Shown in pieces: positions 28,953 to 58,361 of a stretch of DNA of 64,000 nt; within the stretch, counting starts at the first letter, position 1; every line of letters starts with the position of its first letter. Position numbers and translations under genes: made by a program. The notes beneath the pieces were generated by a model. It worked only from the letters and a program-made list of their open reading frames with translations, did no database searches and had not been told where the DNA came from. The DNA is taken from positions 250,887 through 314,886 of IMG/VR virus record IMGVR_UViG_3300025121_000282. The stretch is one strand, 5' to 3'.

Positions 28953-29150
28953 TCATTTAGCCCAAAGGGCTGGGTTGTACTGTGTACCCCAGAGCGAGGA
29001 CTCAGTAAGTGTAGTTGTCAAATTACGCACACGGATTACGTGTATCCAATTTGACACCAGTGTTGTGGGTTGCTGGTTGGTCTCACGTGCGTGGGTTACC
29101 AACCAATCAAGGTCTTCTTGTTCTATTCTTATTGAGAATATTTTCTTCAT
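28953..29150 (-). CDS. Ribbon-helix-helix (CopG/Arc-like) regulator, 65 aa
   Basis: MKKIFSIRIEQEDLDWLVTHARETNQQPTTLV: alternating beta strand followed by two helices; operator-like inverted repeat directly upstream. Confidence 0.6.
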   Translation of the reverse strand: MKKIFSIRIEQEDLDWLVTHARETNQQPTTLVSNWIHVIRVRNLTTTLTESSLWGTQYNPALWAK

Positions 29151-29189
29151 GGCGTAATACACTATACAACAACGTATTACGCCACACAA
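29150..29189 (-). promoter_or_regulatory. Sigma70-type promoter (TTGTGT-17-TATAGT) with 11-bp inverted-repeat operator flanking the -10 box
   Basis: TGGCGTAATAC (29150-29160) / GTATTACGCCA (29174-29184); -10 at 29166-29161, -35 at 29189-29184. Confidence 0.65.
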
Positions 29190-29192
29190 GTA

Positions 29193-30185
29193 CTACAGTA
29201 TGTTTGCAGCCACGAGTTTTTGCAGTGTTTGTAAACTAACATTTTTGGCAAATACGTACGTATTAGACTTAGAGTTTTTAAATTTCACATAACTATTTGG
29301 GTTCTGTCTAATTTTCTCGAAGTTACCTGTTATTTTTCCATTCTCGTCTAAATGCACCCTGGAGTCTACGCCACTATTTGGGAACATAAATCCACCCAAT
29401 GGTACTTTGGTCCACTGGATTTTGTTTAACTGGTCTTCACTTAGGTTCTTAAGGTATATCTCTGTATCTCCACGTGCGTGTTGTACCCCATCTAGCACCA
29501 GACTGATTTCTTTGTTGGGGTCCTCCGTGACTATAGAGGACATTTTTCTTATAAAAGAACTTATTTTGCGAATCAAACTCCCGATGTGAATTCTGGACGA
29601 AGCACTTTCTAAGTCCTCAATGCTTAAATCGCTGGGGACTATAAGTGCTTGGTCTCTATGGTTGAACACTCTAAACTTAGATGAGTTTTTACTTATGGTG
29701 TCCATAACATGCAAAAATTTACTATTTGGACGGTCTGTTTTCCAGTCTGAAGAGCTTATCAAGTAAAATGTGTGTTTGGTATGGTCCAGCAGTTTCAGCA
29801 CAGAGTCTATATTGTTGCTGTGTGTTTCGAGGTGCTCACTGAGTTTGACCTTAATTTCCTTATCTACAGGAAGTAAACTGTCTAAAGTTGCTATGTATGC
29901 AAGTACTTTTTGTCGTTGATTTTTGATCGCCTCGACCACTTCTGGCACATTTGCATACTCAACACCACCATACCGCCATCCGGATGGCTTGAAATGGGCG
30001 TTTGAGGGTGCCAGGACGACAGGTTTGCCATAAGCTATAGTCAGGTAAATCCCCCTAGTCTGCAACTGCAGGGGAGGCACTTCTAAATCGTTTTTGCCAC
30101 ATTCTTTTTGAAATGCATCAATTTCGTTGCTGAAATCGGTAGATTTAGAAACAATAAGCCTAAGTTTAGTACTCAATGTCATCAT
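29193..30185 (-). CDS. Hypothetical protein (probable virion internal protein)
   Basis: Long ORF; start reassigned to MMTLSTKLR (30185), sharing the LSxxLR N-terminal motif of 51444 and 52088. Confidence 0.55.
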   Translation of the reverse strand: MMTLSTKLRLIVSKSTDFSNEIDAFQKECGKNDLEVPPLQLQTRGIYLTIAYGKPVVLAPSNAHFKPSGWRYGGVEYANVPEVVEAIKNQRQKVLAYIATLDSLLPVDKEIKVKLSEHLETHSNNIDSVLKLLDHTKHTFYLISSSDWKTDRPNSKFLHVMDTISKNSSKFRVFNHRDQALIVPSDLSIEDLESASSRIHIGSLIRKISSFIRKMSSIVTEDPNKEISLVLDGVQHARGDTEIYLKNLSEDQLNKIQWTKVPLGGFMFPNSGVDSRVHLDENGKITGNFEKIRQNPNSYVKFKNSKSNTYVFAKNVSLQTLQKLVAANIL

Positions 30186-30243
30186 ACAGAAAGGTGTCCT
30201 TCCATCTTTAACATTCGTCAACATTAAAGATGGACCGGTTATG

Positions 30244-30507
30244 TCACAACAATTTAAGTGACTCCATGGGCTGGTCTGTGGCAAAGGCAGTCAATTGATT
30301 GTTTAAGTCAGGTTCGTGCCACAGAACACACTTACCATTGGCGGGGACTGCCGAGATCAAATCTTGTTCTTTCGGCACACCATACACTATCACTGTACCC
30401 AGGTGCGGCCCATGGTTTAGTGCCCAGTGGTCCATAGCATGAAGAAGTTGTGCTGCTCTTTTACCCTCTGACAGGTCTTTTCTTGTCACAAAGTATAGTC
30501 TACTCAT
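30244..30507 (-). CDS. Peptidyl-tRNA hydrolase Pth2/PTRHD1-like protein (87 aa)
   Basis: LYFVTRKDLSEGKRAAQLLHA and EPDLNNQLTAFA motifs; ATG 30507 overlaps upstream TGA (ATGA coupling). Confidence 0.7.
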   Translation of the reverse strand: MSRLYFVTRKDLSEGKRAAQLLHAMDHWALNHGPHLGTVIVYGVPKEQDLISAVPANGKCVLWHEPDLNNQLTAFATDQPMESLKLL

Positions 30508-31184
30508 AAACCAAACCACTTGACGTCAGGACTATTTATTGCAATAAGTTGGTTTTCCAAATTTTCCAAATTTTTGGTTTCGTCTTTGTATTTGGTTTCT
30601 CTGTCAAGTCTGTAGCCTACTATGCCCGCAGACATTGAATTACATTTGTGAATCAATACCACGTCTGAGTATTTATTTAAGGAGTCCTCTAGGGACTGGA
30701 TTATACGTCTAGACTTGTTGATACTCTCTTGGACTAGCCTAGACGCCTCTCCTACAACATTTTCTTTGGAATTTATGGCTGCGGAATTCAGCCATAAACT
30801 GATAGCACCCTCAAGAAGTGTTCTGTAATCTTTGTCTAAACACGTACCAATAAGTTTGGACAAGGACTTAACATTCGGTTTGTCTTCACCGGCCTTAAGT
30901 TTAGATTCACACGCTTTGTATGGGGTATTGTTTAAAAAAGCTAGTGCTAGATGGTGTTCTCGGAGAAGAGAAGAATTGGGAATTCTGGATCTTAAACCGT
31001 GAGATTTATTTTTAGATTTGTCCAACCTACGTTGAAGACGTGCAACCTCTGCAGCTCCATTTGGTTGTTTTAGTTGTTTACGACAACCACGTATAGTGTG
31101 TTTCAGAGCGTAGATTTCTGTTTTCAGAAGTCTACGCGTGCAGATTTTTTCTTTTAGGGACGACTTGAGTGCTATCTTATCCAT
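30504..31184 (-). CDS. Basic helical hypothetical protein, first gene of Pth2-like operon
   Basis: AAAGGA SD; LREHHLALAFLNNTPYKACE motif; Lys/Arg-rich N-terminal coiled coil. Confidence 0.7.
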   Translation of the reverse strand: MDKIALKSSLKEKICTRRLLKTEIYALKHTIRGCRKQLKQPNGAAEVARLQRRLDKSKNKSHGLRSRIPNSSLLREHHLALAFLNNTPYKACESKLKAGEDKPNVKSLSKLIGTCLDKDYRTLLEGAISLWLNSAAINSKENVVGEASRLVQESINKSRRIIQSLEDSLNKYSDVVLIHKCNSMSAGIVGYRLDRETKYKDETKNLENLENQLIAINSPDVKWFGL

Positions 31185-31201
31185 GGTCCAATTCCTTTTG
31201 T

Positions 31202-31245
31202 TTGATGATTTAGAAAGAAACGCAACATCTTTTCTAAATCATCAA
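31202..31245 (-). promoter_or_regulatory. 15-bp perfect RNA hairpin between leader ORF stop and downstream Shine-Dalgarno
   Basis: TTGATGATTTAGAAA (31202-31216) pairs with TTTCTAAATCATCAA (31231-31245); 14-nt loop; no U-tract follows on the minus strand. Confidence 0.85.
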
Positions 31246-31301
31246 GGAGGACCACGGGCTAGGTGCAGCTACATTTCGGAAGTGGGATAATTGATTCTCA
31301 T
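31242..31301 (-). CDS. Putative leader/arrest peptide MRINYPTSEM-(UAG)-LHLARGPP
   Basis: ATG AGA ATC AAT TAT CCC ACT TCC GAA ATG TAG CTG CAC CTA GCC CGT GGT CCT CCT TGA TGA; RGPP is a RAPP/RAGP-type arrest motif; below the ORF track cut-off. Confidence 0.65.
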
Positions 31302-31307
31302 ACTTTT

Positions 31308-31336
31308 AATTTAATCACCCCATTGGTCATTGTCAA
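31308..31336 (-). promoter_or_regulatory. Sigma70-type promoter TTGACA-17-TAAATT placing +1 at or next to the leader ATG (leaderless mRNA)
   Basis: -35 at 31336-31331, -10 at 31313-31308, 6 nt before ATG 31301; no SD in front of the leader. Confidence 0.65.
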
Positions 31337-31382: not shown

Positions 31383-32111
31383 TCACACCTCTATCAACAA
31401 TTTTGGGTTGAATTTTGGGTTTTCTGATTGACGGGCATACCCGAACGGGTTACATACGAACCGGGTCAGCCCTAGCGTTTTATCTGTCGAGTCGTGTGTA
31501 TGCCCGTAGACCCAGAGCTTCGGAGTCACCAAAGTACAGTCATCGATTCCTCCGACGAAAAACGCATTAAGTTTGCTACCCTGCCAACGTTCAGTCACCA
31601 GATCGTTGTGCGGGATCATATGGGTAACAACCACGTCTGTTTCCATGACATTCTTTTGGATCATGTCCACGTCTCGGCGTCCACGTTCATAGACCCACGG
31701 TTCGAATTTGCGAATAGTTGTGAAATCAGCCATTGAGTCGCGCCCAAACTTCTTGGTGTACTGCTCAGGTTCAGGGAACCAAAGTGTACCACCAATAAAT
31801 CGCCGCCCACTGATAGTTACAGGTTCGTCCCGGAGAAGATAGATGTTCCCAAATTGGGAACACATGGCAGCAATCTCGGCCTCGGCGACTGCAGCCACGG
31901 ACCCATAGAATTCATGATTGCCGAGGGTGTATACTACATTTGCATATTTCTTCGAGAACGTGGTCAGGATCGTCTTCAAAGACCCACCTTGAAGGACGCC
32001 CACGTCTCCCGCGAGAACAGCAATGTCCGCGTCTGCCAAATCAGCAACGAGGCTTTCACCGTGGTCCCGGTGGAATTCTGCGTGGAGATCAGAAACAATC
32101 AGCAGTTTCAA
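31383..32111 (-). CDS. Calcineurin-like metallophosphoesterase
   Basis: SDLH, AGD, GNHE, THMIP and YGHTH motifs. Confidence 0.9.
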   Translation of the reverse strand: MKLLIVSDLHAEFHRDHGESLVADLADADIAVLAGDVGVLQGGSLKTILTTFSKKYANVVYTLGNHEFYGSVAAVAEAEIAAMCSQFGNIYLLRDEPVTISGRRFIGGTLWFPEPEQYTKKFGRDSMADFTTIRKFEPWVYERGRRDVDMIQKNVMETDVVVTHMIPHNDLVTERWQGSKLNAFFVGGIDDCTLVTPKLWVYGHTHDSTDKTLGLTRFVCNPFGYARQSENPKFNPKLLIEV

Positions 32112-33700: not shown

Positions 33701-33715
33701 ACATAGTCCTTTCGG

Positions 33716-33788
33716 TGCTCGCCCAGGGACTCGAACCCTGACCTGATCGATTTAGAGTCGACCCGCCTTGACATTTGGCCACACGAGC
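33716..33788 (-). tRNA. Amber suppressor tRNA, anticodon CUA (amino-acid identity unknown; CCA not encoded)
   Basis: GCTCGTG TG GCC AAATGTCAA GGC G GGTCGA CTCTAAA TCGATC AGGT CAGGG TTCGAGT CCCTG GGCGAGC A (then CCG): cloverleaf with canonical T-arm and CTCTAAA anticodon loop. Confidence 0.85.
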
Positions 33789-33791
33789 GTG

Positions 33792-35327
33792 TTACTGTCT
33801 AAATAACACAAACTTTTTCTTTTCTTTACCAAACACTTTTACGTACCCTTTTGATTCAGCAAACTCCTTCTCTGTCATATGGCATCCAACGGCATGGTTG
33901 TATAAAGTCTTTTTGTGCATCATCCAACCAGTCGTGTCTACGTACACATAATCAGGCTTGGTAGTGGAAACATGTTCCCAATTTGAAGCTTGGTAGACGA
34001 TGCCCTCATGGCCCACGGTAGTATCGGCAAACGAAACTATTGCCTTGGTTTCTGGAAATTGGTCCCAGAAGTGTTTGGCCGATCTTGCTAAAAACCAAGA
34101 CCCGAAATTAGGCTTGTGGCAGTCTGTTCTGATACAAAGTCTATCCAACTCCGACACTGTTTTTGGAGTAAGTCCTACTGAGGTGGACACCTCTTTTCTA
34201 ACAACAGGAGCGAACTTTGCCACTGCTATTAATTGGCCATCCAAGTAAGCCCCAAACATAAACTTTGCTTTACGACCACACTGGGCATAGTGCCAAGCTC
34301 TTAAAAATCTGTTACCCTCAGAGTGCTCTATAGGCTTGACAATTAATTGGTTAAACTCGAATTCAGTTATTTTGGACTCGCTGACACCAATTACAGACTG
34401 AATTTTATCTTGAACCAAATCAGGTATTAAAGTCTCATGCTCTTCTATACACAAAAGTAGTGAATCAGGGTTTGCAATTCTAAGATATGCTGATTTAGCA
34501 ACGTCCCGCCTTTGGTTATTCGGAAGGTTGTGCCAATAATCACCTTGTACTTCAATGTATATATTAAAATCCGATAAATACAGGTCAAAATTATACGGAC
34601 CCACAGATTTTTCTCTGGTGTATTTTATCTCAAGCAGGTCTAATACATCAGAAACCACTTTTTCAGGTTTAGACTGTCTGCCTGACCTAGAAAAGGCCTC
34701 TATACCAGCAGCTATTTTAGCCCTGTACTCTGGATTTTTAAATCTTTCTTTTGCCAATTCACTGTGTATCTTTTTGTATTCTGGGTTCTGGATTGCCAAG
34801 TCATGGTTAGCTCTCGCCTCAGGCGTGTGCATTACTGACACTTTTTCCCTGAAGTATTTGTCTGGGTCGGCTTTATAATCCGCCTTGTTTCGTTCCGACA
34901 CCAGCTGTTTATGCTGGTCTGACTGAAACATCTTGGTAATGCGGTCTTGCTGAAACTCCCTAAAATCTGGGTCTTCCCAAGCCTGTTTAGCTTGCTTAGA
35001 CCTTTGGGCTCTGCCATCTTCAGAATTGGCTATGGCACCCAATATTTTTGACTGGTTGCTGACGTACTCTGGATTCGCCCAGGCTTGCTTGGATTGCTTA
35101 GACCTCTGAGCTTTTCCTTGAGGACTCTTAGCTCTGCACGGGGAACACCAGTATTCCCCGCGTTTTCTCAGAGTTCTATTTACAATAGACCTCTGATTGC
35201 ATACAGACCTACCACAACACTGATAGACTACCCACCCTCTTTGTTTAGGGGTGGGTAATCTATACCCAAAGTCTATTTCGTTGTGCTCTTGGTCGGAAAT
35301 TTGTGCGTACAGTGTTGCTATATCCAT
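33792..35327 (-). CDS. PD-(D/E)XK (Vsr/DUF559-like) endonuclease fused to C-terminal Mom/Hef-like GNAT domain, N-terminal NUMOD3-like repeats
   Basis: SKPEK...YNFDLYL...IEVQGDYWH; FLRAWHY...ELDRLC...SFADTTVGHEGIVYQASNW; AQRSKQ-x-KQAW-x-x-P repeats. Confidence 0.7.
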   Translation of the reverse strand: MDIATLYAQISDQEHNEIDFGYRLPTPKQRGWVVYQCCGRSVCNQRSIVNRTLRKRGEYWCSPCRAKSPQGKAQRSKQSKQAWANPEYVSNQSKILGAIANSEDGRAQRSKQAKQAWEDPDFREFQQDRITKMFQSDQHKQLVSERNKADYKADPDKYFREKVSVMHTPEARANHDLAIQNPEYKKIHSELAKERFKNPEYRAKIAAGIEAFSRSGRQSKPEKVVSDVLDLLEIKYTREKSVGPYNFDLYLSDFNIYIEVQGDYWHNLPNNQRRDVAKSAYLRIANPDSLLLCIEEHETLIPDLVQDKIQSVIGVSESKITEFEFNQLIVKPIEHSEGNRFLRAWHYAQCGRKAKFMFGAYLDGQLIAVAKFAPVVRKEVSTSVGLTPKTVSELDRLCIRTDCHKPNFGSWFLARSAKHFWDQFPETKAIVSFADTTVGHEGIVYQASNWEHVSTTKPDYVYVDTTGWMMHKKTLYNHAVGCHMTEKEFAESKGYVKVFGKEKKKFVLFRQ

Positions 35328-35369
35328 ATATAACTATACAACCGTAACTATACGCTTTCGCAGTTACAT

Positions 35370-37793
35370 CTAACCCAAGTACACGTAGTCATCATGGAGA
35401 GCGCTGGTACCAACCATCACCACGGGAAGTCCTGAGCAATTTTCCAGCATATCAATAAACGCTCTGGTTTCAGAGCTAAACTTGACTAATGCCTCTTTGC
35501 CCCCGCGCAGACCGACGTCGATGTGGTTGATTTGATTCACAAAATTCAGTACAAGCTTGGTTGCACCGCAGGTTCTAGCAGCGTCCTTAAGCCCAATTTG
35601 GGAGAATGTCCCTACGCGTCGAATGCGCTTAGTAACCGTGGTTCGCTCGCGTTCCGCCAACATTTTTGCCTCTTCCTCTGGCATGTTGGCTCTCTTTGCT
35701 ATCTCATCCCAGGTCAATTCCTGTTGGTCGGGGTACCACCCTCCAGAATTCCCCAGTTCTTTGCCAGACTCGTCATACACGTTTCCAACCCTAATTGGGT
35801 GCGACCTTAAGTTTAAGTAGACGTCGCCCACCATGTTTGGGGGAATGGCCATATAGTCCATGGCTGCCTGAACTGTGCAGTTTCTAGAAGTGCAGTTTGG
35901 ATAGTGTGAGCCGTGGTCAATACTCAGTGCATAGCCCTGGCTTCCTTCATGGAGCCAGTAGTCACCCTTACTGATGATTTTGTGGGTGGCATCACGAAAT
36001 GCCATGCCGTTGGTGATTTGAATGTTTCCAGGGAGGTCTATTGGTGCTGGTGTGTTACCAACCAGGGGCACATTCTGCTTCCGTAAAACCTTATCAGCCA
36101 GGGCGGTCCCGGAACCCTGCATAGTGGAGGCTAGGTGCTTGGTGCTTTCTGCTCCCTCACGCTCTCGTGCAGCGTGGTCCTCGGTTACAATACCTGCACG
36201 ATCATGAACATAAAGGTCTGGTCCACCACACTCCTCATACTCCTTGATGAACTGTTCCCAACGAAAAGATGAACCGGGAGAAATCCATCCAGCAACCTCA
36301 CGGCCAAGTGCTTTCTTCAGACCGCATGCGGTGGGCAGAGCCTTGGCTACAAACTTCCCATCTTTCAAATTCGGGTGAGCAATAGTGTTGTGTGAAATAG
36401 CACCATTGGCTAGATAACTGTGGGTTTGGGGCATGGTTACATCAAAAACCCGTTCTTCCCCAATTGCCAAATTGACTTCTTTGATGTCTACTACATGATA
36501 GTCCTCGGCCAATTTAACTAAGCCGGTAAATCCAGCCGCTCGGAGTGTGGCGGCATTGCGTAAAACATACGCACCTGCGATGGCTCCATTCTCAGTTGAA
36601 TTCGTGCTGTGTGCAGCTTTGCGTATTTGAATCAAACGGTTATAATTGAGATTGATGAGAGAGCCTTGAGACCAATCAGCATCGTATGTGGCTATTTCCA
36701 CATTTAATCTAGCCGACTTGACCTCTGAAAGAAAACCTACTCGCTCACGAAAAAGGGTTAAATTTTCCAAACCCGCCATCTCAATTTGATGTGATCGACT
36801 GCGAGAAGGTCGCTTGTCCTGGTAGGACCGGTAAGTGGAATTAATACCCAACAACAATAATAACTGTTGGGCCATCAGCACCACATCTTTTGAAATGTTG
36901 CCAAAAGAAACCCTTCGCTTTTTGGCCGACCCATCCGAGTCAAACAGACCCCGCAGAAATGCTCCAATTATTTCAGGGGTGCCCACAGTGACAGCAGTCG
37001 GTATCTCTTTTTCGGCTTTAGTAGCTAGCTTCAACCCCACTTGTTCAAAGATCTGGCGAAGTTCGGAAATACTGCAGGTTTCCAGAACGTGGCACTGTTT
37101 GTCTTTTACCTTGTAAACATTCCATGGGATGCCGATGCCATCGTAAAATTTTTGAGTCTTGCAGCAAACATCCATCTGGTCAGAGTGGAACGCTATGCTA
37201 ACATTTGCCTTTTTGGGACTGTAACACCCATCACCAACCAACAGCCCCAGGTATTCAGCCATTAATAATTCGTCTGGTTTATTTGTCAGTGCGGTTCCAT
37301 TCGCTCTGTGTATCAGGGATAACATGTCTATAGGTAGACTGGTTCCCACCCAGTTAGTCTTTTTAGGAAATAAAAACTGGTGTACTCCAGGTACTAAATC
37401 CATTGACCGTATCCACTGTGGGGCGTTTTCAGTGGGGTCCCAAACATAGTACTGATGTATGTCAGTACATTTGTACTCAATGCCATTCTTGAGTTTGATT
37501 TTGTTGACTACTCTAACCCCGTCATCAACCAAATCTGTAGGCGACTCCCAACAGCCGTCCATGTTGAGAAGCTGCAGACCCTTTTGGTTCTGAGTGACAA
37601 TATCCCCAAGCTTTTTTAATCCCCGGTCAGTGGGGATTATGGCGTCAAAAGTTTGACAGTGGCCTGCATTGGGATAGTTGGCAGAAGACACATTTCGGAC
37701 ATTGAAAATATCCACCAAACGAGACGACAAAGCTCCCTTACCTGAGCTACCCCAGGCTTGGTCGAGGACAACATTGAACTTTCCAGGCTGCAT
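35370..37793 (-). CDS. purZ: PurZ-type adenylosuccinate synthetase homologue (2-aminoadenine pathway), intein-containing; about 383 aa after splicing
   Basis: GSSGKG (Ser where PurA has catalytic Asp in GDEGKG), PNAGH|T, EGSQG, CTSRNCT, HPIRVG, SGGWYPDQQELTW, TTVTKRIRRV, LNFVN in place of PurA TKLD. Confidence 0.85.
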   Translation of the reverse strand: MQPGKFNVVLDQAWGSSGKGALSSRLVDIFNVRNVSSANYPNAGHCQTFDAIIPTDRGLKKLGDIVTQNQKGLQLLNMDGCWESPTDLVDDGVRVVNKIKLKNGIEYKCTDIHQYYVWDPTENAPQWIRSMDLVPGVHQFLFPKKTNWVGTSLPIDMLSLIHRANGTALTNKPDELLMAEYLGLLVGDGCYSPKKANVSIAFHSDQMDVCCKTQKFYDGIGIPWNVYKVKDKQCHVLETCSISELRQIFEQVGLKLATKAEKEIPTAVTVGTPEIIGAFLRGLFDSDGSAKKRRVSFGNISKDVVLMAQQLLLLLGINSTYRSYQDKRPSRSRSHQIEMAGLENLTLFRERVGFLSEVKSARLNVEIATYDADWSQGSLINLNYNRLIQIRKAAHSTNSTENGAIAGAYVLRNAATLRAAGFTGLVKLAEDYHVVDIKEVNLAIGEERVFDVTMPQTHSYLANGAISHNTIAHPNLKDGKFVAKALPTACGLKKALGREVAGWISPGSSFRWEQFIKEYEECGGPDLYVHDRAGIVTEDHAAREREGAESTKHLASTMQGSGTALADKVLRKQNVPLVGNTPAPIDLPGNIQITNGMAFRDATHKIISKGDYWLHEGSQGYALSIDHGSHYPNCTSRNCTVQAAMDYMAIPPNMVGDVYLNLRSHPIRVGNVYDESGKELGNSGGWYPDQQELTWDEIAKRANMPEEEAKMLAERERTTVTKRIRRVGTFSQIGLKDAARTCGATKLVLNFVNQINHIDVGLRGGKEALVKFSSETRAFIDMLENCSGLPVVMVGTSALHDDYVYLG
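36387..37658 (-). mobile_element. Intein (424 aa) with LAGLIDADG homing endonuclease
   Basis: Starts CQTFDA (Cys1), block B CTDIH, LAGLIDADG-like YLGLLVGDG and FLRGLFDSDG, ends VFDVTM..HSYLANGAISHN followed by Thr(+1). Confidence 0.92.
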
Positions 37794-37795
37794 GA

Positions 37796-39499
37796 CTAAA
37801 CTCTCCTAACCCACTTGGTTTTTGGCACCTCTGATACTGTACAGAGACCGGTATACTCTACAAACTGTCGTTCTGTCATATGGTTTGACAGTGCTTGATC
37901 ATACACAGTACGTTTGTGTATGTATCTCACTGTGACTGGGTCAAAATAATGATACGATTCCCCGGTCTGGCCCGCTTCAATAAAACTACAGGCTTTGTAC
38001 AAGCCACCAGAATCACCAACATTGGGGTCAGAAAATGAAACCAGTAACTTTAGCTTTGGGCTTTCTGATTTATAGGCACCAATTAACTTAGACATACAGT
38101 AAGAAGATAGATTATTCACATCCAGTCCAGACCTTACGCAAAACCGTCTAATCTCTCTGACACTACCTGGATTCAACTTACCCAGCCCCAGTTGCTCTGC
38201 GGTTTTTTTGACAGTTCCGTGTCGGGTTACACCACCAAATACCAGCAAACACACCAATGTGTCCTTAAAATAAGCCCCATAGGGAGAGGCTGCTGTCCCC
38301 AAAGTGCCCAAGTAATGATTGGTGGTTAGAAACACGTGGGCTTCTTTTAACGGAACAGGTCTAAACTCCAAGTCCGACAACTGAAATTGTATTGGTTCTT
38401 CAATGGCTCGCAAAATGTGATAGTCCAACACTTTACGAAGTCTTCCCAGATGCAGTTCATGCTCCCATAACCACACTAACTTATACTTTGAATACTTTTC
38501 TATGTATGTAGCTTTGGCCTTATCTCTGGGTGTTCCAGAGTACCCGTTGTCTTTAAAATTGTGAAGATAATCACCATGGGTCTCTATCAACAAATTGCAT
38601 AATGGTACATAAAAATCAAACGAGTATGGGCCCACCGTGAAACTGCGTTCGAATGGAACCTTATAGTGGGACTCCAAAATGGAGGCTACTATCCTTTCTG
38701 TAGTAGGGTTCTGTAATTTCTCTTTGACACCCGGGATGTCAAAACCAGATTCTGACCCGTATAATTTCAGTAAGGTAGTTCTGCGTTTAATGGCTTTACA
38801 TTTGGCAGACCCACAGGTTAACGGGTGGGCCTGGGTGTAATACGACATCTTGGTTTCAGAGGTATTGTCACACACATAACACTTATAAATTATGGTCTTT
38901 TCACACAGTGGGAATATTTTCGTGGCCTTGTACCCAAATTTAACAAACGTGGCATCGTCATCAGCCCATGCATAGTCTGGGGGCTTTCGTTTCGACAACC
39001 AAAAGTCATGCTTACTTTGTGTGGATTCTTCGCGAATCCAAGTAGCAGCCACAGGACTGCACAGTTTGCAGCACACTACTTTGTTGCTTCTGGATAGACT
39101 TTGCAAACTGGTAGTGTACTGCTCTAGGCAAAATTCACATACAGCTTCAACAGCTTTTTCTGACCTTGGAGACAGTGTGTCTAGGCCATACCCATGTTTG
39201 GCTATGGTCAACAAAGAGTCTGCCCCAGCGGGCCGTTTAAGTACACTTAATAAATAGTACTCTCTAGGTGTTGTTTGTTTCTGCCTTACCCAATGAGATT
39301 TTAACTGATCGCAGCCCGAACAGGCATCTGGCGGAACGCGTCCAGGTTTGGAAAACTGATATTTCTTCCTCTCAAACACTTCTAAACAGAAATCGCATTG
39401 CACCACTACAGGTTTCTTAGACTGTGGCGCTAAGTCACTGTACCGATATCCGTATTTCTCAACAGTCAAGTCATCTTGGTGCATACCTGCATTATACAC
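37796..39499 (-). CDS. PD-(D/E)XK endonuclease fused to Mom/Hef-like GNAT domain, three N-terminal Zn-ribbon repeats
   Basis: K-x-GY...S-x-K-x-V...CxxC repeats; YSFDFYV...IETHGDYLH; FLTTNHYLG...EIRRFC...SFSDPNVGDSGGLYKACSF. Confidence 0.7.
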   Translation of the reverse strand: MYNAGMHQDDLTVEKYGYRYSDLAPQSKKPVVVQCDFCLEVFERKKYQFSKPGRVPPDACSGCDQLKSHWVRQKQTTPREYYLLSVLKRPAGADSLLTIAKHGYGLDTLSPRSEKAVEAVCEFCLEQYTTSLQSLSRSNKVVCCKLCSPVAATWIREESTQSKHDFWLSKRKPPDYAWADDDATFVKFGYKATKIFPLCEKTIIYKCYVCDNTSETKMSYYTQAHPLTCGSAKCKAIKRRTTLLKLYGSESGFDIPGVKEKLQNPTTERIVASILESHYKVPFERSFTVGPYSFDFYVPLCNLLIETHGDYLHNFKDNGYSGTPRDKAKATYIEKYSKYKLVWLWEHELHLGRLRKVLDYHILRAIEEPIQFQLSDLEFRPVPLKEAHVFLTTNHYLGTLGTAASPYGAYFKDTLVCLLVFGGVTRHGTVKKTAEQLGLGKLNPGSVREIRRFCVRSGLDVNNLSSYCMSKLIGAYKSESPKLKLLVSFSDPNVGDSGGLYKACSFIEAGQTGESYHYFDPVTVRYIHKRTVYDQALSNHMTERQFVEYTGLCTVSEVPKTKWVRRV

Positions 39500-40448: not shown

Positions 40449-40584
40449 GGGGCTCTCTCCATCTTTGTTGCGTAGACACTATTAATTTTACATTTGTGGG
40501 CCCCAAATAACAACTCCTATGGTGCACTTCTAAATACAGATTGACAAGCAGGTGTGGTACACAAATTATTTGTTGGAGGGTTAC

Positions 40585-41649
40585 ATGTCTAATTTAGATT
40601 TCGATCTAGTAAAACACACAATAGTCATGACGAGAGGTGGGTCTGTCTCTTATGGAATGGCTACGCCCACCTCGGATTTAGACATCAAGGGTATTTTTAT
40701 ACCCCCAGAAGAGTATACCCTAGGGTTTTATCTAAATTGTGAAACCATCAATAAGAACGAGGATTTAGAACTGTTTAGACACTTGTTAAATCAAGATAGT
40801 CTCAGGTATGTTGACAATGGCCTTGAGGGGTCTGTTTATTCATTAGTAAAATACTTATTCTTAGCCGCCAAGGGAAACCCAAACATACTGGAAGTACTGT
40901 TTTGCGAAGAGGAAGATGTAATACACACCTCTGAGGAGGGTGAGATTCTTCGTGAGCACAGAGGTCTATTTTTAACCCAAGTTGTTAGACACCAATACGT
41001 TAGATATGCAATGGCTCAACTTGAAGATATTAAACGGCACAAGTCGTATTTGCTTAACCCCATAAAAAACAAGCCCACCCGATCTGATTTTGGGCTACCT
41101 ACCCAGCCTGCAATTAAGAAACACAAACTCGGGCTAATTGAAGCTGCAATTAAAAAACAGACAGACAGAGGGTACACTAGAGACCAAGCATTAAAAATTT
41201 TGGTAACGTACCCTGAGTACGAGAAGGACTTAAGTACACCAAACTTTATTGCAAATCTAAATGGGGAGGCTGCTTATACCAGTGCCGCCACTACATACAC
41301 ACGTCAGCAGCTTCATTGGGAAAATAGAAACGCAAAAAGGGCAGCATTAGAGGCAAAGTATGGATTTGATACTAAACACACCTCACATGTTGTTAGGCTA
41401 CTAAAAACGGGGCATGAGATTTTAACTCAAGGGAAGTTAACAGTCCGCAGACCAGATTTCGAGGAATTGTTGGCTATCCGTGCTGGCTCATGGAGTTATG
41501 AGGAAGTAATGACTTGGGCCAATGACATGGTAAGAAAAATAAATTATGACTCTTTGGATTCCCCAATTCCATTAGAGCCGGATATGGTGGCTATCAACAA
41601 TTTGTGTGTAAGATTACACAAGATGTTTTACAAAAAGTTGGGATTTTGA
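40585..41649 (+). CDS. Pol-beta superfamily nucleotidyltransferase (RlaP/YcgL-like)
   Basis: GSVSYGMATPTSDLDIKGIF, GNPNILEVLF, YGFDTKHTSHVVRLL, LLAIRAG; GGAGG SD. Confidence 0.85.
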   Translation: MSNLDFDLVKHTIVMTRGGSVSYGMATPTSDLDIKGIFIPPEEYTLGFYLNCETINKNEDLELFRHLLNQDSLRYVDNGLEGSVYSLVKYLFLAAKGNPNILEVLFCEEEDVIHTSEEGEILREHRGLFLTQVVRHQYVRYAMAQLEDIKRHKSYLLNPIKNKPTRSDFGLPTQPAIKKHKLGLIEAAIKKQTDRGYTRDQALKILVTYPEYEKDLSTPNFIANLNGEAAYTSAATTYTRQQLHWENRNAKRAALEAKYGFDTKHTSHVVRLLKTGHEILTQGKLTVRRPDFEELLAIRAGSWSYEEVMTWANDMVRKINYDSLDSPIPLEPDMVAINNLCVRLHKMFYKKLGF

Positions 41650-55676: not shown

Positions 55677-58361
55677 TTACGGCAGGATGATGGGCTCGCC
55701 AACTCTTAAGAGAAGAGAAGAAGCGCCAATGGCAATACCCATGGGCAAAACTACATCGCCACTGCCGCTGGGGGCGGTGGCAGTGATCTGCCCGTCTGTG
55801 GTGGACAGGTATAGTGTCGCACCAGAAGTCCAAGCTCCACCACCGGCTCCCGATGCGATCTTGCCGAAGAGTGCAACGCGGATGGTGCTTGCCGTGTCCA
55901 GCGCAGAAGCGTCCAGCGCAACACCAGCTACCTGCGAGTTGGCAGCTGCATCAGCATCAGCAAGCTGCACCTTGCCATCAGCATCGATGTACACAACACT
56001 GCCAACATCCACGGCAGCATGTACAGCGGGTGTGTCAAAGTGCACGGCGAACGGAGCCGCTGCAGCACCAGTCTGGCCAACAACCAAACCACCTGAACCT
56101 ACGATCTTAACTTTCTGGTTGGTGGTTGCATTGCCGAACGAGATGACCTCAGCACCATCGGTGGTGTCAAGGGTCAGGTATGCATTTGTGCTCTCGCCAA
56201 TCACCAACGAGGTGGCAGAGTTGTCTACGATCCCGTAGGTCGAAGCAGCAGCAGCACTCAGGTTAAGTGCACCGGCAGAGGTGAGCGCCAAAGTACCAGA
56301 AGTAATGGTGCTTAGGGTAAGACTGCCGCTGGTAGCGCTGACGTTCGAGTTGCCTGTACCGTCGATGCTAAACACGCCTGAAGACAGAATGTCTACAGTG
56401 CCCGTCACATCAATGTCCAGGTTGGCGCCCGCATTCAAGTCCACGAGGCCAACGCTATCCAGGACTAGGGTGCCCGAGGTAAGCGTCGAAAGCGTCAGGT
56501 TACCACCTGTGACGGAGACGTTTGAGGCGCTTGTGCTGTCAATGGAGAACGAGGCCCCATCCACCGAGAAGGCCGAGGCCCCCACGTTATACGTGAACGT
56601 ACCCGTCGTCTGTCCGACGTTGCCCGTGAAGGTCGTCACACCACTCTGGGCCAGTGTCCCGGCATTCTCGATACCCGCGTCGAAGCCCGAGATGGACAGA
56701 CCTACCGAAGCACCCGCACCCGCATTCGTCGCGCCGGTCAGCTTCACACCGTAGATGTCCCCGGCATTGTTGAACGAGGTTGCATTACTCAGGTCAACCA
56801 CGATGCCATTCGACGTACCCGTGAAGGCCGAGGCCGCATACACAATACTCAGGGTGCCAACGTTTTCAGTCGTCTTGGCTTGCGTCAGTGCAACTGCACC
56901 GTTGTCTACAGTGATACCGACACCACCGTTGTAGGCCCCATCAAGTGTAGCCCCACCACTTGCTTCCAAGCTCACCCAAGCTGCACCCGTCCGGTACTTC
57001 AGGGTCGAAGTAGTGGAGTCGTAAAGGAGGTCACCGGCTGCGGGGACCGCGATGTTGTCGGTGATCTCCTGGGTCGTGAAAACCGGCAGACTCAAAAGCA
57101 CCTGGGCGTCGGTGCCAAGCTTCACGCGGTCATTCGCATCCAGGCTGGTGATCGTGTCGACGTAGGCAGCCGAGAACGCTGCCGCCGACGTGCCGAGCGT
57201 GACGGTCGAGTCCGCACTCGGGTACATGCTGCCGTTGCCGACGATCACTTGATCGGCGTTGTTCGCGAACAGGTGCAGTAGGCCGCCAGCCATGCCGCCA
57301 CCGATGGAGAAGTCTCCACCGCCGGTGATCATCGTGGCCCCGCCCTTGGGGATCATCGTGCCGTCACCATTGACGCGGAGCAGTTCGTTGCCGGAGTTGT
57401 TCTTGACCACGAACCCGGTCGCGGTCGTGTCGGCGCCGAGCATCATCACGATGTCGGAAGCGACGGCGACGTTGTCGAACCGCAGCTCGCCCGTCGCCGA
57501 TGTCGCGACCGTATTCGTGCCGTCGTGCTGGATCGCGAAGTCGGATCCGGTGCCAATCGTGATGCTCACCGAATCCGGCAGCATCGCGCCGCCCGTGAGC
57601 GTCGCGAGATCGTCGGCGGCCAGCGTTCCGACGCGCAGCGGAAGCGCGTCAAGGACGGCATCGCCGCCAAGGCGGCCGGTCAGGTGCGCGACCACCCACA
57701 CGTCGTTCGTCTCGTCGTACACGAGACCGTGGAACGGCGAGTAGATCGAGACCGCCTCGGTGTCCGCGGGCTGCGTGGTCCAGGCAGAAGCGACCGTCGC
57801 GATATTCGAGATCCCGTTGTACTCGGTGACGAGCCGGACGTTGTCGCCCGCGCTCTTCAGCCACATGCCGGTGTAGTAGTCGTTCGTGGCGCTGCCGCCC
57901 GCGAGCTTCACCTGGACGTTCGTCATGCCCGTCTGATCGCCAATATCGGCAATCGTCGCGACGAGCGCGTTCGCGTCTGTCACCACATCACCGGTGCCGA
58001 CATCATTCGCGGCCTGATACCGCTGCGCGGCATACCCGGCATTCGCGGATCCGGACGGCCCCGCGTTCACCAGCGCAATGTTGTCGTCGACCTCCATGAT
58101 CGTGCTATTAACCGTAGTAGTAGTCCCGTTTACGGTTAAATTACCAGTAATGGTGACACCATCTGCAAACACAGCAGCCCCTGTAAAGGACTTACTGTTC
58201 AGGGCAAGGTCTCCGCCCAGCGACAACGTGGAGTTGCCAGCACCACCACCTAGGGTGATAACACCAGCTGCAGCGCCCAAATCAAAGGACGTACCATCGA
58301 GGCCTAGACTCAACGACGACGTTTTACGTACGCCACCGTCCAGTACTAAAATTTGTGCCAT
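55677..58361 (-). CDS. Fibre/decoration protein (894 aa) with C-terminal DUF2190-like domain and a GC-rich internal segment
   Basis: GNLTVNGTTTTVNST fibre motif, Gly/Thr/Ala-rich beta repeats, GSVVYIDADGKVQLADA...LYLSTTDG; GGAGAG SD. Confidence 0.7.
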   Translation of the reverse strand: MAQILVLDGGVRKTSSLSLGLDGTSFDLGAAAGVITLGGGAGNSTLSLGGDLALNSKSFTGAAVFADGVTITGNLTVNGTTTTVNSTIMEVDDNIALVNAGPSGSANAGYAAQRYQAANDVGTGDVVTDANALVATIADIGDQTGMTNVQVKLAGGSATNDYYTGMWLKSAGDNVRLVTEYNGISNIATVASAWTTQPADTEAVSIYSPFHGLVYDETNDVWVVAHLTGRLGGDAVLDALPLRVGTLAADDLATLTGGAMLPDSVSITIGTGSDFAIQHDGTNTVATSATGELRFDNVAVASDIVMMLGADTTATGFVVKNNSGNELLRVNGDGTMIPKGGATMITGGGDFSIGGGMAGGLLHLFANNADQVIVGNGSMYPSADSTVTLGTSAAAFSAAYVDTITSLDANDRVKLGTDAQVLLSLPVFTTQEITDNIAVPAAGDLLYDSTTSTLKYRTGAAWVSLEASGGATLDGAYNGGVGITVDNGAVALTQAKTTENVGTLSIVYAASAFTGTSNGIVVDLSNATSFNNAGDIYGVKLTGATNAGAGASVGLSISGFDAGIENAGTLAQSGVTTFTGNVGQTTGTFTYNVGASAFSVDGASFSIDSTSASNVSVTGGNLTLSTLTSGTLVLDSVGLVDLNAGANLDIDVTGTVDILSSGVFSIDGTGNSNVSATSGSLTLSTITSGTLALTSAGALNLSAAAASTYGIVDNSATSLVIGESTNAYLTLDTTDGAEVISFGNATTNQKVKIVGSGGLVVGQTGAAAAPFAVHFDTPAVHAAVDVGSVVYIDADGKVQLADADAAANSQVAGVALDASALDTASTIRVALFGKIASGAGGGAWTSGATLYLSTTDGQITATAPSGSGDVVLPMGIAIGASSLLLRVGEPIILP

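What the first reader, a model, noticed from the sequence alone, without database searches (positions are those of the whole stretch)
30244..31184. Output operon of the switch: unknown basic helical protein translationally coupled to a minimal Pth2-like hydrolase
Seen: ATGA overlap couples a Lys/Arg-rich 226-aa protein (R-x-HHLALAFL-x-x-TPY-x-x-CE motif) to an 87-aa protein with Pth2-type RxDL..G...AQ..HA and EPD....TA motifs. Known: Pth enzymes recycle peptidyl-tRNA released from stalled or split ribosomes. Inference: the pair may be a phage ribosome-rescue or termination-support module induced when termination at UAG fails; the first protein is a candidate ribosome-binding factor.
Basis: partly seen in the sequence, partly recalled or inferred. 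Interest (0 to 1): 0.65.

Follow-up and report, generated by a model that had tools for sequence, protein, structure and literature searches.

The report
Suppressor-tRNA-linked Pth2-like hydrolase operon
A groundwater jumbo phage carries a two-gene operon, an unknown helical protein plus a stripped-down peptidyl-tRNA-hydrolase-like enzyme, that in more than 25 related phages sits beside a stop-codon-suppressor tRNA and behind a short leader that appears to switch the operon on only when that same stop codon is read through.

Summary
On the minus strand, gene A (226 aa, 30504-31184) overlaps gene B (87 aa, 30244-30507) by ATGA. B is a confident minimal Pth2-fold protein: VIA-align Z about 12 and rmsd about 1.9 A against six solved Pth2 enzymes, and hhalign 98.6% to phage proteins that pass Pfam PTH2. 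A belongs to a family of over 200 clusters with no Pfam, PHROG or PDB relative.

A sits directly upstream of B in essentially every B locus, mostly with a 4-nt or 1-nt overlap.

Three further results came out of the comparison:
- **Conserved cassette.** It consists of a suppressor tRNA (CUA or UUA), a promoter, an 8-15-codon uORF, an anti-SD/SD hairpin, then A and B.
- **Matched stop codon.** The uORF stop matches the tRNA anticodon in 21 of 21 loci (TAG with CUA, TAA with UUA).
- **Readthrough path.** The readthrough frame crosses the anti-SD in 27 of 27 leaders.

So A-B is very probably made only when the cognate stop codon is read through. What A-B then does is inferred. The candidates are feedback on the suppressor tRNA, or clean-up of peptidyl-tRNA. 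The genome itself uses the standard code. No paper I searched describes this cassette.

The parts
33714..33788 (-). Suppressor tRNA, anticodon CUA (reads UAG); the only suppressor among the genome's 8 tRNAs and set apart from the other seven
   Evidence: ARAGORN; Rfam tRNA 45.9 bits. A suppressor tRNA lies upstream of A on the same strand in 20 related loci and in G001.
31308..31336 (-). Sigma-70-like promoter, TTGACA - 17 nt - TAAATT. The -10 element ends 7 nt before the uORF ATG, so the uORF would have a very short 5' leader or none.
   Evidence: Consensus scan. The same TTGACA / -10 / about 7 nt / ATG layout is visible in related leaders. The transcription start is inferred, not measured.
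31269..31301 (-). Leader uORF of 10 codons (MRINYPTSEM) ending in TAG (31271-31269)
   Evidence: Read from the sequence. Equivalent uORFs occur in 27 distinct leaders. The stop is TAG where the tRNA is CUA and TAA where it is UUA, 21 of 21.
31242..31268 (-). Readthrough extension: 8 sense codons after the TAG, running across the anti-SD to TGA (31244-31242)
   Evidence: The readthrough frame covers the whole anti-SD core in 27 of 27 leaders, and wherever a next stop is reached it is TGA.
31246..31257 (-). Anti-SD / anti-start element. The core GGTCCTCC (31253-31246) is the most conserved block of the leader. The 5' arm CCGUGGUCC spans 31257-31249.
   Evidence: Invariant G,G,C,C,C,C columns in the alignment of 27 leaders. 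It pairs with A's initiation region in the MFE fold.
31181..31257 (-). Sequestering stem-loop. The outer helix is CCGUGGUCC : GGACCAUGG (the latter at 31189-31181, including A's AUG at 31184-31182). It encloses a 16-bp inner hairpin.
   Evidence: RNAfold MFE -40.1 kcal/mol, z -4.56, 0 of 200 shuffles as stable. The MFE pairs anti-SD with the RBS in 21 of 27 leaders. Cognate anti-SD:RBS duplexes average -16.6 kcal/mol, against -13.5 non-cognate and -9.0 shuffled; permutation p < 1e-4.
30504..31184 (-). Gene A: 226-aa basic all-helical protein. It has an N-terminal helical hairpin (4-67), a small conserved helical core (71-133, R75, L79, E93, W131 invariant) and a long variable C-terminal helix (140-217).
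   Evidence: No Pfam, PHROG, NCBIfam, PADLOC or PDB relative.
30244..30507 (-). Gene B: 87-aa minimal Pth2-fold protein, start overlapping A's stop (ATGA)
   Evidence: AF2 pLDDT 94.7. Foldseek top hits are all Pth2. VIA-align Z 11.8-12.3. hhalign 98.6% to Pfam-positive phage PTH2 proteins.

Best explanation
A-B is the effector arm of a self-contained suppressor-tRNA cassette.

Shown by comparison:
- The cassette runs, in order: suppressor tRNA (CUA or UUA), own promoter, a short uORF ending in the cognate stop codon, an anti-SD element that pairs with A's SD and start codon, A, then B translationally coupled to A.

Inferred mechanism of control:
- If the uORF ribosome terminates, the hairpin stays closed and A-B is not translated.
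- If the suppressor tRNA decodes the stop, the ribosome runs through the anti-SD arm and melts the hairpin, so A, and through coupling B, is made.
- In 6 of 27 relatives the uORF is simply in frame with A.

Inferred function:
- B, a Pth2-superfamily esterase pared down to an acidic core, hydrolyses the acyl (peptidyl or aminoacyl) ester on tRNA.
- A, a fast-evolving and mostly basic helical partner, supplies recognition of the tRNA, most likely of the suppressor tRNA itself.
- The pair would then feed back on suppression and hold readthrough at a set level. This is analogous in logic to RF2 autoregulation.
For: Fold and homology of B.

Conservation of the A-B pair and its coupling.
- Within 5 kb either side, only A, B and the tRNA are shared between loci.

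Link to a suppressor tRNA:
- 28 of the 38 tRNAs found in the flanks carry stop anticodons.
- G001 has one suppressor among 30 or more tRNAs. It lies upstream of the pair and away from the tRNA clusters.
- In G000 the suppressor is likewise separate from the other seven tRNAs.

The sensor:
- uORF stop matches the anticodon in 21 of 21 loci.
- The readthrough frame crosses the anti-SD in 27 of 27 leaders.
- The hairpin is stable and co-varies with the RBS.
- In-frame uORF-A versions exist.

Roles of A and B:
- The B core is acidic (pI 4.4-6.6) and conserved (median identity 64%).
- A is usually basic and diverges fast (median identity 27%), as do the tRNA bodies.
- A distant A homologue keeps the tRNA and the switch without B (L043), so A has a role of its own tied to the tRNA.
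Against: - There is no expression or biochemical data, and only DNA runs hold this phage.
- Canonical Pth2 needs no partner and acts on N-blocked aminoacyl-tRNA, not free aminoacyl-tRNA (textbook knowledge).
- The Lys that aligns with the Pth2 'GK' is K, R or Q within the B family. The Pth2 DAG Asp is replaced by an E-P-D motif.
- A has no detectable RNA-binding fold.
- The genome uses TAG as an ordinary stop (54 of 325 long ORFs). TAG-ending genes carry no back-up stops, so why the phage keeps a suppressor at all is unexplained.
- The TAG/TAA switches may represent few independent events. The short B tree implies 4 changes, but only 1 is forced by well-supported branches.
Confidence: 0.4

Rival explanations
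1. Readthrough sends ribosomes into 3' regions and raises stalling and peptidyl-tRNA drop-off. The readthrough-induced A-B pair is a general peptidyl-tRNA hydrolase or ribosome-rescue module, with A acting as a ribosome-binding factor.
For: - Pth2 enzymes recycle peptidyl-tRNA. PTH2 homologues are widespread in jumbo phages and have been proposed to serve ribosome rescue (PMC7824862).
- The same sensor evidence applies.
- Phage Pth2-like genes in IkeLoa, Arash and RaK2 sit inside tRNA clusters.
Against: - The host already has an essential Pth1.
- The pair is linked to the lone suppressor tRNA, not to the general tRNA clusters.
- B lacks the basic surface expected of a stand-alone tRNA enzyme.
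- A can occur with the tRNA and switch but without B.
Confidence: 0.3
2. Positive feedback, a code switch. A (for example by blocking RF1/RF2 or favouring the suppressor at the A site) and B (by recycling suppressor peptidyl-tRNA) increase suppression once it starts. That would give a sharp, irreversible change of decoding late in infection.
For: - A sensor of suppression driving translation-related genes fits either sign of feedback.
- Phage 'code-change modules' of suppressor tRNA plus aaRS plus release factor have been described (bioRxiv 10.1101/2021.08.26.457843).
Against: - G000 is not recoded. TAG is a normal stop and TAG-split ORFs are not in excess.
- An ochre version would be hard to tolerate if suppression ran away.
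- A shows no similarity to release factors or known RF-binding proteins.
Confidence: 0.12
3. Timer only. The suppressor tRNA and leader act merely as a delay device for two genes whose function has nothing to do with suppression, for example A as a regulator and B as an esterase on a non-tRNA substrate.
For: - The A core loosely resembles the first helices of sigma-region-4/LuxR-type HTH motifs (my reading; no HMM support).
- DUF2000 proteins share the Pth2 fold and have no known function (2gax, Z 10.6).
Against: - None of 64 A members hits any HTH family.
- B retains the R-x-D-L ... A-Q-x-x-H-A motif of true Pth2 enzymes.
- Only these two genes are ever found behind the switch.
Confidence: 0.1
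4. A toxin-antitoxin-like or anti-defence pair, with A upstream as the fast-evolving neutraliser and B downstream as the conserved effector. It would be carried next to a tRNA gene by chance of cassette mobility.
For: - Gene order, the 4-nt overlap and the unequal evolutionary rates resemble type II TA pairs.
- Pth is known to reverse tRNA-acetylating toxins (PMC9241777, listed).
Against: - No PADLOC hit.
- A is far larger than typical antitoxins.
- The matching of uORF stop and anticodon is not explained by chance linkage.
Confidence: 0.05

Closest known systems
Archaeal/eukaryotic peptidyl-tRNA hydrolase Pth2 (Pfam PF01981; e.g. 3erj, 1q7s, 1xty, 1wn2, 2zv3)
   Same: Same fold over all 87 residues (Z about 12, rmsd about 1.9 A). 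Same N-terminal R-x-D-L ... A-Q-x-x-H-A motif.
   Different: About 30 residues shorter. It lacks part of the helix-1 insertion, 4 residues of the strand-3/4 loop and the C-terminal helix. It gets no direct Pfam hit. The core is acidic. It always comes with partner A. The catalytic Lys and Asp positions are altered.
PTH2 homologues of jumbo phages and Bixzunavirus mycobacteriophages (Iyer et al. 2021, PMC7824862; Xoo-sp13 gp327, IkeLoa gp151, RaK2 ORF216)
   Same: Homologous (hhalign 98.6%, E 9e-16). Found in phages, often near tRNA genes; IkeLoa's is next to a tRNA with a CUA anticodon.
   Different: Those proteins pass Pfam PTH2, keep the C-terminal helix, and are solitary or fused to an HD-like domain. 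No A partner or readthrough leader was seen beside them, but their flanks were not examined in depth.
prfB (RF2) autoregulation by an in-frame UGA
   Same: A cis-acting stop codon measures how efficiently one stop codon is decoded, and sets the synthesis of a translation-termination-related factor.
   Different: prfB uses a +1 frameshift within the gene itself. Here a separate uORF and an anti-SD hairpin are used, the sensed quantity is suppressor tRNA activity, and the output is A plus a Pth2-like enzyme.
Translational attenuation leaders (ermC, cat and similar), in which a ribosome on a leader peptide opens an SD-sequestering hairpin
   Same: Short leader ORF, anti-SD:SD hairpin, and ribosome position deciding SD access.
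   Different: In those systems the trigger is drug-induced stalling. Here the trigger would be readthrough of the leader's stop codon, and the stop co-varies with a neighbouring tRNA anticodon.
'Code-change module' of TGA-recoded Jade phages (suppressor tRNA + TrpRS + RF1; Borges et al., bioRxiv 10.1101/2021.08.26.457843)
   Same: A phage cassette built around a suppressor tRNA together with translation factors.
   Different: No aaRS or release factor here. The host genome of the cassette is in standard code. A sensor leader is present. The effectors are A and a Pth2-like protein.

Membership tests
Pth2 superfamily (PF01981 PTH2 / DUF2000 fold) | Pth2 alpha/beta fold | tested here: met
   AF2 model pLDDT 94.7. 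Foldseek top 10 hits are all Pth2. VIA-align Z 11.8-12.3, rmsd 1.9-2.0 A, 85-87 of 87 residues aligned, with the next unrelated fold at Z 3.2.
Pth2 superfamily (PF01981 PTH2 / DUF2000 fold) | Direct match to the Pfam PTH2 or NCBIfam Pth2 model above cut-off | tested here: not met
   No Pfam hit at E <= 1. No PF01981 match anywhere in the genome at E <= 10. No NCBIfam hit.
Pth2 superfamily (PF01981 PTH2 / DUF2000 fold) | Sequence homology by profile methods | tested here: met
   hhalign of the B family against phage PTH2-like proteins: 98.6%, E 9.4e-16. Four of those five pass or match Pfam PTH2, best 32.8 bits against a cut-off of 23. A combined profile hits seven solved Pth2 chains, E 0.0016-0.3.
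Pth2 enzymes (functional peptidyl-tRNA hydrolases) | Conserved active-site residues. From memory of Fromant et al. 2005, not verified here: a Lys in the G-K motif before A-A-Q, and the Asp of the D-A-G motif. | tested here: inconclusive
   R9, D11, Q20, H23, T73 and A74 are conserved. The residue aligned to the G-K Lys is K16 in the window but K, R or Q across the family, followed by an invariant R17. D-A-G is replaced by an invariant E65-P66 plus a near-invariant D67. No residue-level superposition could be made.
Pth2 enzymes (functional peptidyl-tRNA hydrolases) | Hydrolysis of peptidyl-tRNA; complementation of pth(ts) | not testable with these tools
   Needs a biochemical or genetic assay.
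uORF / anti-SD translational attenuator | Short ORF directly upstream, with an anti-SD segment able to pair with the SD and start codon of the regulated gene | tested here: met
   Window fold -40.1 kcal/mol, z -4.56. Anti-SD pairs with the RBS in 21 of 27 MFE folds.
uORF / anti-SD translational attenuator | Structure supported by co-variation | tested here: met
   Cognate duplexes are more stable than non-cognate ones, permutation p < 1e-4. C-G-C-G-G arms go with GUG starts and C-G-U-G-G arms with CC-AUG starts. This was not a formal column-wise covariation test.
uORF / anti-SD translational attenuator | Expression responds to ribosome behaviour on the uORF | not testable with these tools
   Indirect support only. 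The uORF stop matches the tRNA anticodon in 21 of 21 loci, and the readthrough frame crosses the anti-SD in 27 of 27.
Phage code-change module (suppressor tRNA + aaRS + release factor in a recoded genome) | Genome with in-frame reassigned stop codons | tested here: not met
   TAG ends 54 of 325 long ORFs. There are 34 TAG-split ORF pairs, against 65 for TAA and 89 for TGA. The window is densely coding in table 11.
Phage code-change module (suppressor tRNA + aaRS + release factor in a recoded genome) | aaRS and/or release factor next to the tRNA | tested here: not met
   The neighbours are two Mom-family proteins, an adenylosuccinate-synthetase-like protein, a metallophosphoesterase and small unknowns. 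Only the tRNA, A and B are conserved across loci.
Type II toxin-antitoxin pair | Match to known toxin, antitoxin or defence families | tested here: not met
   No Pfam, PADLOC or NCBIfam match for A or B.

The most novel reading that the evidence does not exclude
The cassette is an autonomous, self-sensing modulator of the genetic code. A phage suppressor tRNA, a cis sensor that reads out that tRNA's activity at its own stop codon, and two effectors (A, a new class of tRNA- or termination-directed factor, and a partner-dependent minimal Pth2 esterase) together set or flip the level of stop-codon readthrough in the infected cell. It exists in interchangeable amber and ochre versions.
Probability: 0.35. 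Interest if true: 0.9.

Novelty: new variant of a known kind. Interest (0 to 1): 0.8.

Why it matters
Many standard-code phages carry suppressor tRNAs whose purpose is unknown; for XacN1 no target genes could be found (PMC5852040). This cassette links such tRNAs to a dedicated sensor and to two dedicated effector genes. That turns 'why do phages carry suppressors' into a testable question.

- It would be a natural sensor of nonsense suppression, in amber and ochre forms. That is of direct interest for genetic-code-expansion work.
- It shows a Pth2 enzyme reduced to 87 residues that apparently depends on a partner.
- It defines a large protein family (A) with no known fold relative.
- It may represent an intermediate stage on the route to stop-codon recoding in phages.

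Tried and rejected
- **Complex prediction of A(1-140) with B:** 'no answer', score 0.00. I do not use it as evidence either way.
- **Fold searches for A:** PDB Foldseek, VIA wide, BFVD, ESM Atlas by shape and by features gave only generic helical-hairpin or coiled-coil matches. The best were uncharacterised phage proteins in BFVD.
- **A profile against PDB sequences:** coiled-coil noise only.
- **The search for related loci with A alignments:** failed.
- **Megablast of the region against GenBank phages:** no match.
- **TAG recoding of the genome:** rejected.
- **Adaptation of TAG-ending genes to readthrough (back-up stops):** none found.
- **A second switch elsewhere in the genome:** a motif scan gave one weak candidate near genome position 211.9 kb. 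It has no ATG-initiated uORF, so I rejected it.
- **RNA evidence:** only groundwater and soil DNA runs hold the phage, so I did not use read laying.
- **Known RNA family for the leader:** none in Rfam.
- **Literature:** searches for a described readthrough-sensing leader or a Pth2-suppressor link found nothing. The library is incomplete.
- **Pth2 active-site residues:** PMC2253226 was not held. The search for Pth2 with Asp86 found no paper.
Full report
**The observation**

The window is the last 64 kb of a 314,886-bp virus record (G000, CheckV 100%). The phage is found in groundwater metagenomes. Both genes of the finding are on the minus strand. A is 30504..31184 (226 aa). B is 30244..30507 (87 aa from its ATG). 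A's TGA and B's ATG overlap as ATGA. A is basic (pI 9.76, 42 K+R) and carries the quoted motif. B carries both quoted motifs.

**Gene B**

B has no direct Pfam, NCBIfam, PADLOC or PDB-sequence hit. It has only a PHROG family of unknown function (phrog_1866, 5e-7).
- It belongs to a tight family of at least 165 clusters of 81-195 aa. All are unannotated and sit on contigs of up to 402 kb.
- An AF2 model built on 12 homologues is confident (pLDDT 94.7).
- Foldseek's ten best PDB matches are all Pth2 enzymes.
- VIA-align gives Z 11.8-12.3 and rmsd 1.9-2.0 A over 85-87 of 87 residues against six Pth2 structures. DUF2000 (2gax) scores 10.6 and the next fold 3.2.

Sequence homology holds through intermediates.
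- The C-terminal domain of Xanthomonas phage Xoo-sp13 gp327 passes Pfam PTH2 (29.5-32.8 bits against a cut-off of 23).
- hhalign between the B family and that phage group gives 98.6%, E 9.4e-16.
- A joint profile finds seven solved Pth2 chains. It aligns B's RKDLSEGKRAAQLLHA with the Pth2 R-x-D-L-x-x-G-K-x-A-A-Q-x-x-H-A motif.

B is shorter than canonical Pth2. It has a trimmed helix-1 insertion, a shorter strand-3/4 loop and no C-terminal helix. Its core is acidic (pI 4.4-6.6 across the family). The residue at the Pth2 Lys position varies (K, R or Q), and D-A-G is replaced by E-P-D. B is therefore a member of the superfamily, but its activity is not proven.

**Gene A**

The word search found only A itself. 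A profile of five upstream neighbours found 227 representatives (47 at E <= 1e-10). The conserved core is R-R-x-x-H-L-A-x-A-x-L-N-G-x-x-Y-x-x-C-E ... P ... W-L, with R75, L79, E93 and W131 invariant.
- None of 64 members hits a meaningful Pfam or PHROG family.
- The AF2 model (pLDDT 90.8) shows a helical hairpin (4-67), a small helical core (71-133) and a long helix (140-217).
- No fold search gave a specific match.

**Co-conservation**

I ran HMM searches over the ORFs of 37 fetched loci. An A-family gene lies directly upstream of B on the same strand in 34 of them. Two of the exceptions (L011/L012) turn out to hold a divergent A (A-R-E-H-L-L-A-Y-H-I-L-R-G-R) abutting B. The third exception is the fused Xoo-sp13 protein.
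- In 19 of 27 distinct pairs the overlap is 4 nt or 1 nt. Four pairs have a larger gap: an inserted gene in three and a 186-nt spacer in one.
- A diverges far faster than B. Median pairwise identity is 27% for A and 64% for B.
- BLASTP shows that no other neighbour of the window pair is shared with the other loci.

**The suppressor tRNA**

ARAGORN finds one tRNA in the window, anticodon CUA, at 33714-33788 on the same strand (Rfam 45.9 bits). It is the only suppressor among the genome's eight tRNAs and lies far from the other seven.
- In the related loci, 28 of the 38 tRNAs in the flanks carry stop anticodons (CUA or UUA). They sit upstream of A on the same strand, usually 150-1,700 nt away.
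- A distant A homologue without B (L043, from a 377-kb contig) also follows a tRNA-CUA.
- G001 (402 kb) showed no tRNA in its 5-kb flank. It has exactly one suppressor among 30 or more tRNAs, a tRNA-CUA about 4.7 kb upstream of the pair and away from its tRNA clusters.
- The 26 distinct suppressor tRNAs are ordinary class I cloverleaves but differ widely in sequence.

**The switch**

Between the tRNA and A, every leader has the same layout. It runs: a sigma-70-like promoter, about 7 nt, an ATG opening a uORF of mostly 7-17 codons, a stop codon, 9-24 nt, the conserved block GGTCCTCC, an inner hairpin, then A's SD (GGAGGAC-like) and start codon.

In the window:
- The promoter is at 31336-31308.
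- The uORF (MRINYPTSEM) is at 31301-31269 and ends in TAG.
- The readthrough frame runs 8 codons across GGTCCTCC (31253-31246) to TGA (31244-31242).
- CCGUGGUCC (31257-31249) pairs with GGACCAUGG (31189-31181), which contains A's AUG.
- The fold is -40.1 kcal/mol, z -4.56.

Across 27 distinct leaders:
- The uORF stop is TAG in 21 and TAA in 6. It equals the codon read by the neighbouring tRNA in all 20 loci with a tRNA in the flank (15 CUA/TAG, 5 UUA/TAA), and in G001.
- The readthrough frame covers the whole anti-SD core in 27 of 27, and the next stop reached is always TGA.
- The stop context is biased: last sense codon ACG in 13 of 27, following base G in 23 of 27.
- The MFE pairs anti-SD with the RBS in 21 of 27.
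- Cognate anti-SD:RBS duplexes average -16.6 kcal/mol, against -13.5 for non-cognate and -9.0 for shuffled pairs, permutation p < 1e-4.
- In six leaders the uORF is in frame with A with no stop between them, so readthrough would translate A directly.

No Rfam family matches the leader. On a poorly resolved B tree the TAA label needs four changes, but only one is forced by well-supported branches. The number of independent TAG/TAA switches is therefore uncertain.

**What it most likely does**

Shown: the anatomy and its co-variation. Inferred: termination at the uORF stop leaves the hairpin closed, so A-B is off. Decoding of that stop by the suppressor tRNA drives the ribosome through the anti-SD arm and frees A's initiation region, with B following by coupling. 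A-B would then be produced in proportion to suppressor activity.

A sensor of one component driving two translation-related genes most simply implies feedback on that component or handling of its consequences. I favour a suppressor-directed acyl-tRNA hydrolase, with B as esterase and A as tRNA-recognising partner, acting as a homeostat. The reasons:
- The pair is linked to the lone suppressor tRNA rather than to the tRNA clusters.
- B is acidic and stripped down, while A is usually basic.
- A diverges as fast as the tRNA bodies, while B, which would see the invariant acyl-CCA end, is conserved.
- A keeps the tRNA and the switch even where B is absent.

Positive feedback, a pure timer and a TA-like pair are less likely. 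The complex prediction gave no answer and is not used.

**Against, and open questions**

- The genome is in standard code. Its TAG-ending genes have no back-up stops. The benefit of carrying a suppressor is unexplained.
- There are no RNA data, and no activity, binding or structure data.
- My statement about the Pth2 catalytic Lys and Asp rests on memory of Fromant et al. 2005. I could not check it in the held library.

**Comparison with what is known**

- PTH2 homologues in jumbo phages have been reported and proposed to serve ribosome rescue (PMC7824862).
- Suppressor tRNAs in standard-code jumbo phages are known but unexplained (PMC5852040 and PMC6102473).
- A 'code-change module' of tRNA + aaRS + RF is known in recoded phages.
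- Three literature searches found nothing describing a readthrough-sensing leader, the A family, or a Pth2-suppressor cassette.

**Verdict**

B is a new minimal, partner-associated branch of a known enzyme superfamily, and the regulatory principle is a known one (attenuation, or prfB-like sensing). The cassette as a whole has no described counterpart that I could find.

Noticed in passing
window 33792-39499 (-): A DNA-modification-like cluster lies immediately upstream of the suppressor tRNA. It holds two Mom-family proteins (33792-35327 and 37796-39499) flanking an adenylosuccinate-synthetase-like gene (35370-37793) that is interrupted by an intein with a LAGLIDADG endonuclease. This could be a PurZ-type enzyme.
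   Followed up: no
window 40552-41649 (+) and 31383-32111 (-): An RlaP-family 'RNA repair pathway' nucleotidyltransferase, and a calcineurin-like metallophosphoesterase between the tRNA and the A leader. Neither is conserved next to the cassette in other loci.
   Followed up: partly
L007, L008, L043 and the contigs of P0185: In several related phage contigs a histidine kinase (HisKA/HATPase_c) and stand-alone receiver-domain genes lie just upstream of the tRNA-switch-A-B cassette. None was seen beside it in the window.
   Followed up: no
L015:2518-3285: Here A ends in TAG, the stop read by the adjacent tRNA-CUA, and B's ATG follows immediately in the same frame. Readthrough would give an A-B fusion protein.
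   Followed up: no
window 28953-30284 (-): The 363-aa ORF downstream of B ends in TAG (29195-29193). It is in frame with the next 78-aa ORF, which looks like a ribbon-helix-helix protein, so amber readthrough would join them. This may be chance.
   Followed up: no
L009 (Xanthomonas phage Xoo-sp13 gp327; also XacN1 and the Stenotrophomonas phages CM1 and RAS14): In these jumbo phages the Pth2-like domain is fused to an N-terminal domain of about 175 aa with an H-D-I-G-K-P motif. It is weakly HDIG-like (18.7 bits, below cut-off).
   Followed up: partly
L028:2409-2563 and L030:2346-2426: ARAGORN reports tRNA-like genes with 2-base or 4-base 'anticodons' (ct, ctcg, ca) just downstream of B in two related loci. 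They may be odd anticodon loops or artefacts.
   Followed up: no
L038:2801-2875 (Salmonella phage Arash) and L039:2096-2169 (Mycobacterium phage IkeLoa): Pfam-positive phage Pth2-like genes in unrelated phages also lie within about 1 kb of a tRNA that ARAGORN reads as anticodon CUA. The Arash record annotates its tRNA as tRNA-Phe.
   Followed up: no
window 56001-58000: A 2-kb stretch at 61% G+C inside the 894-aa ORF 55677-58361, against about 44% for the rest of the window.
   Followed up: no
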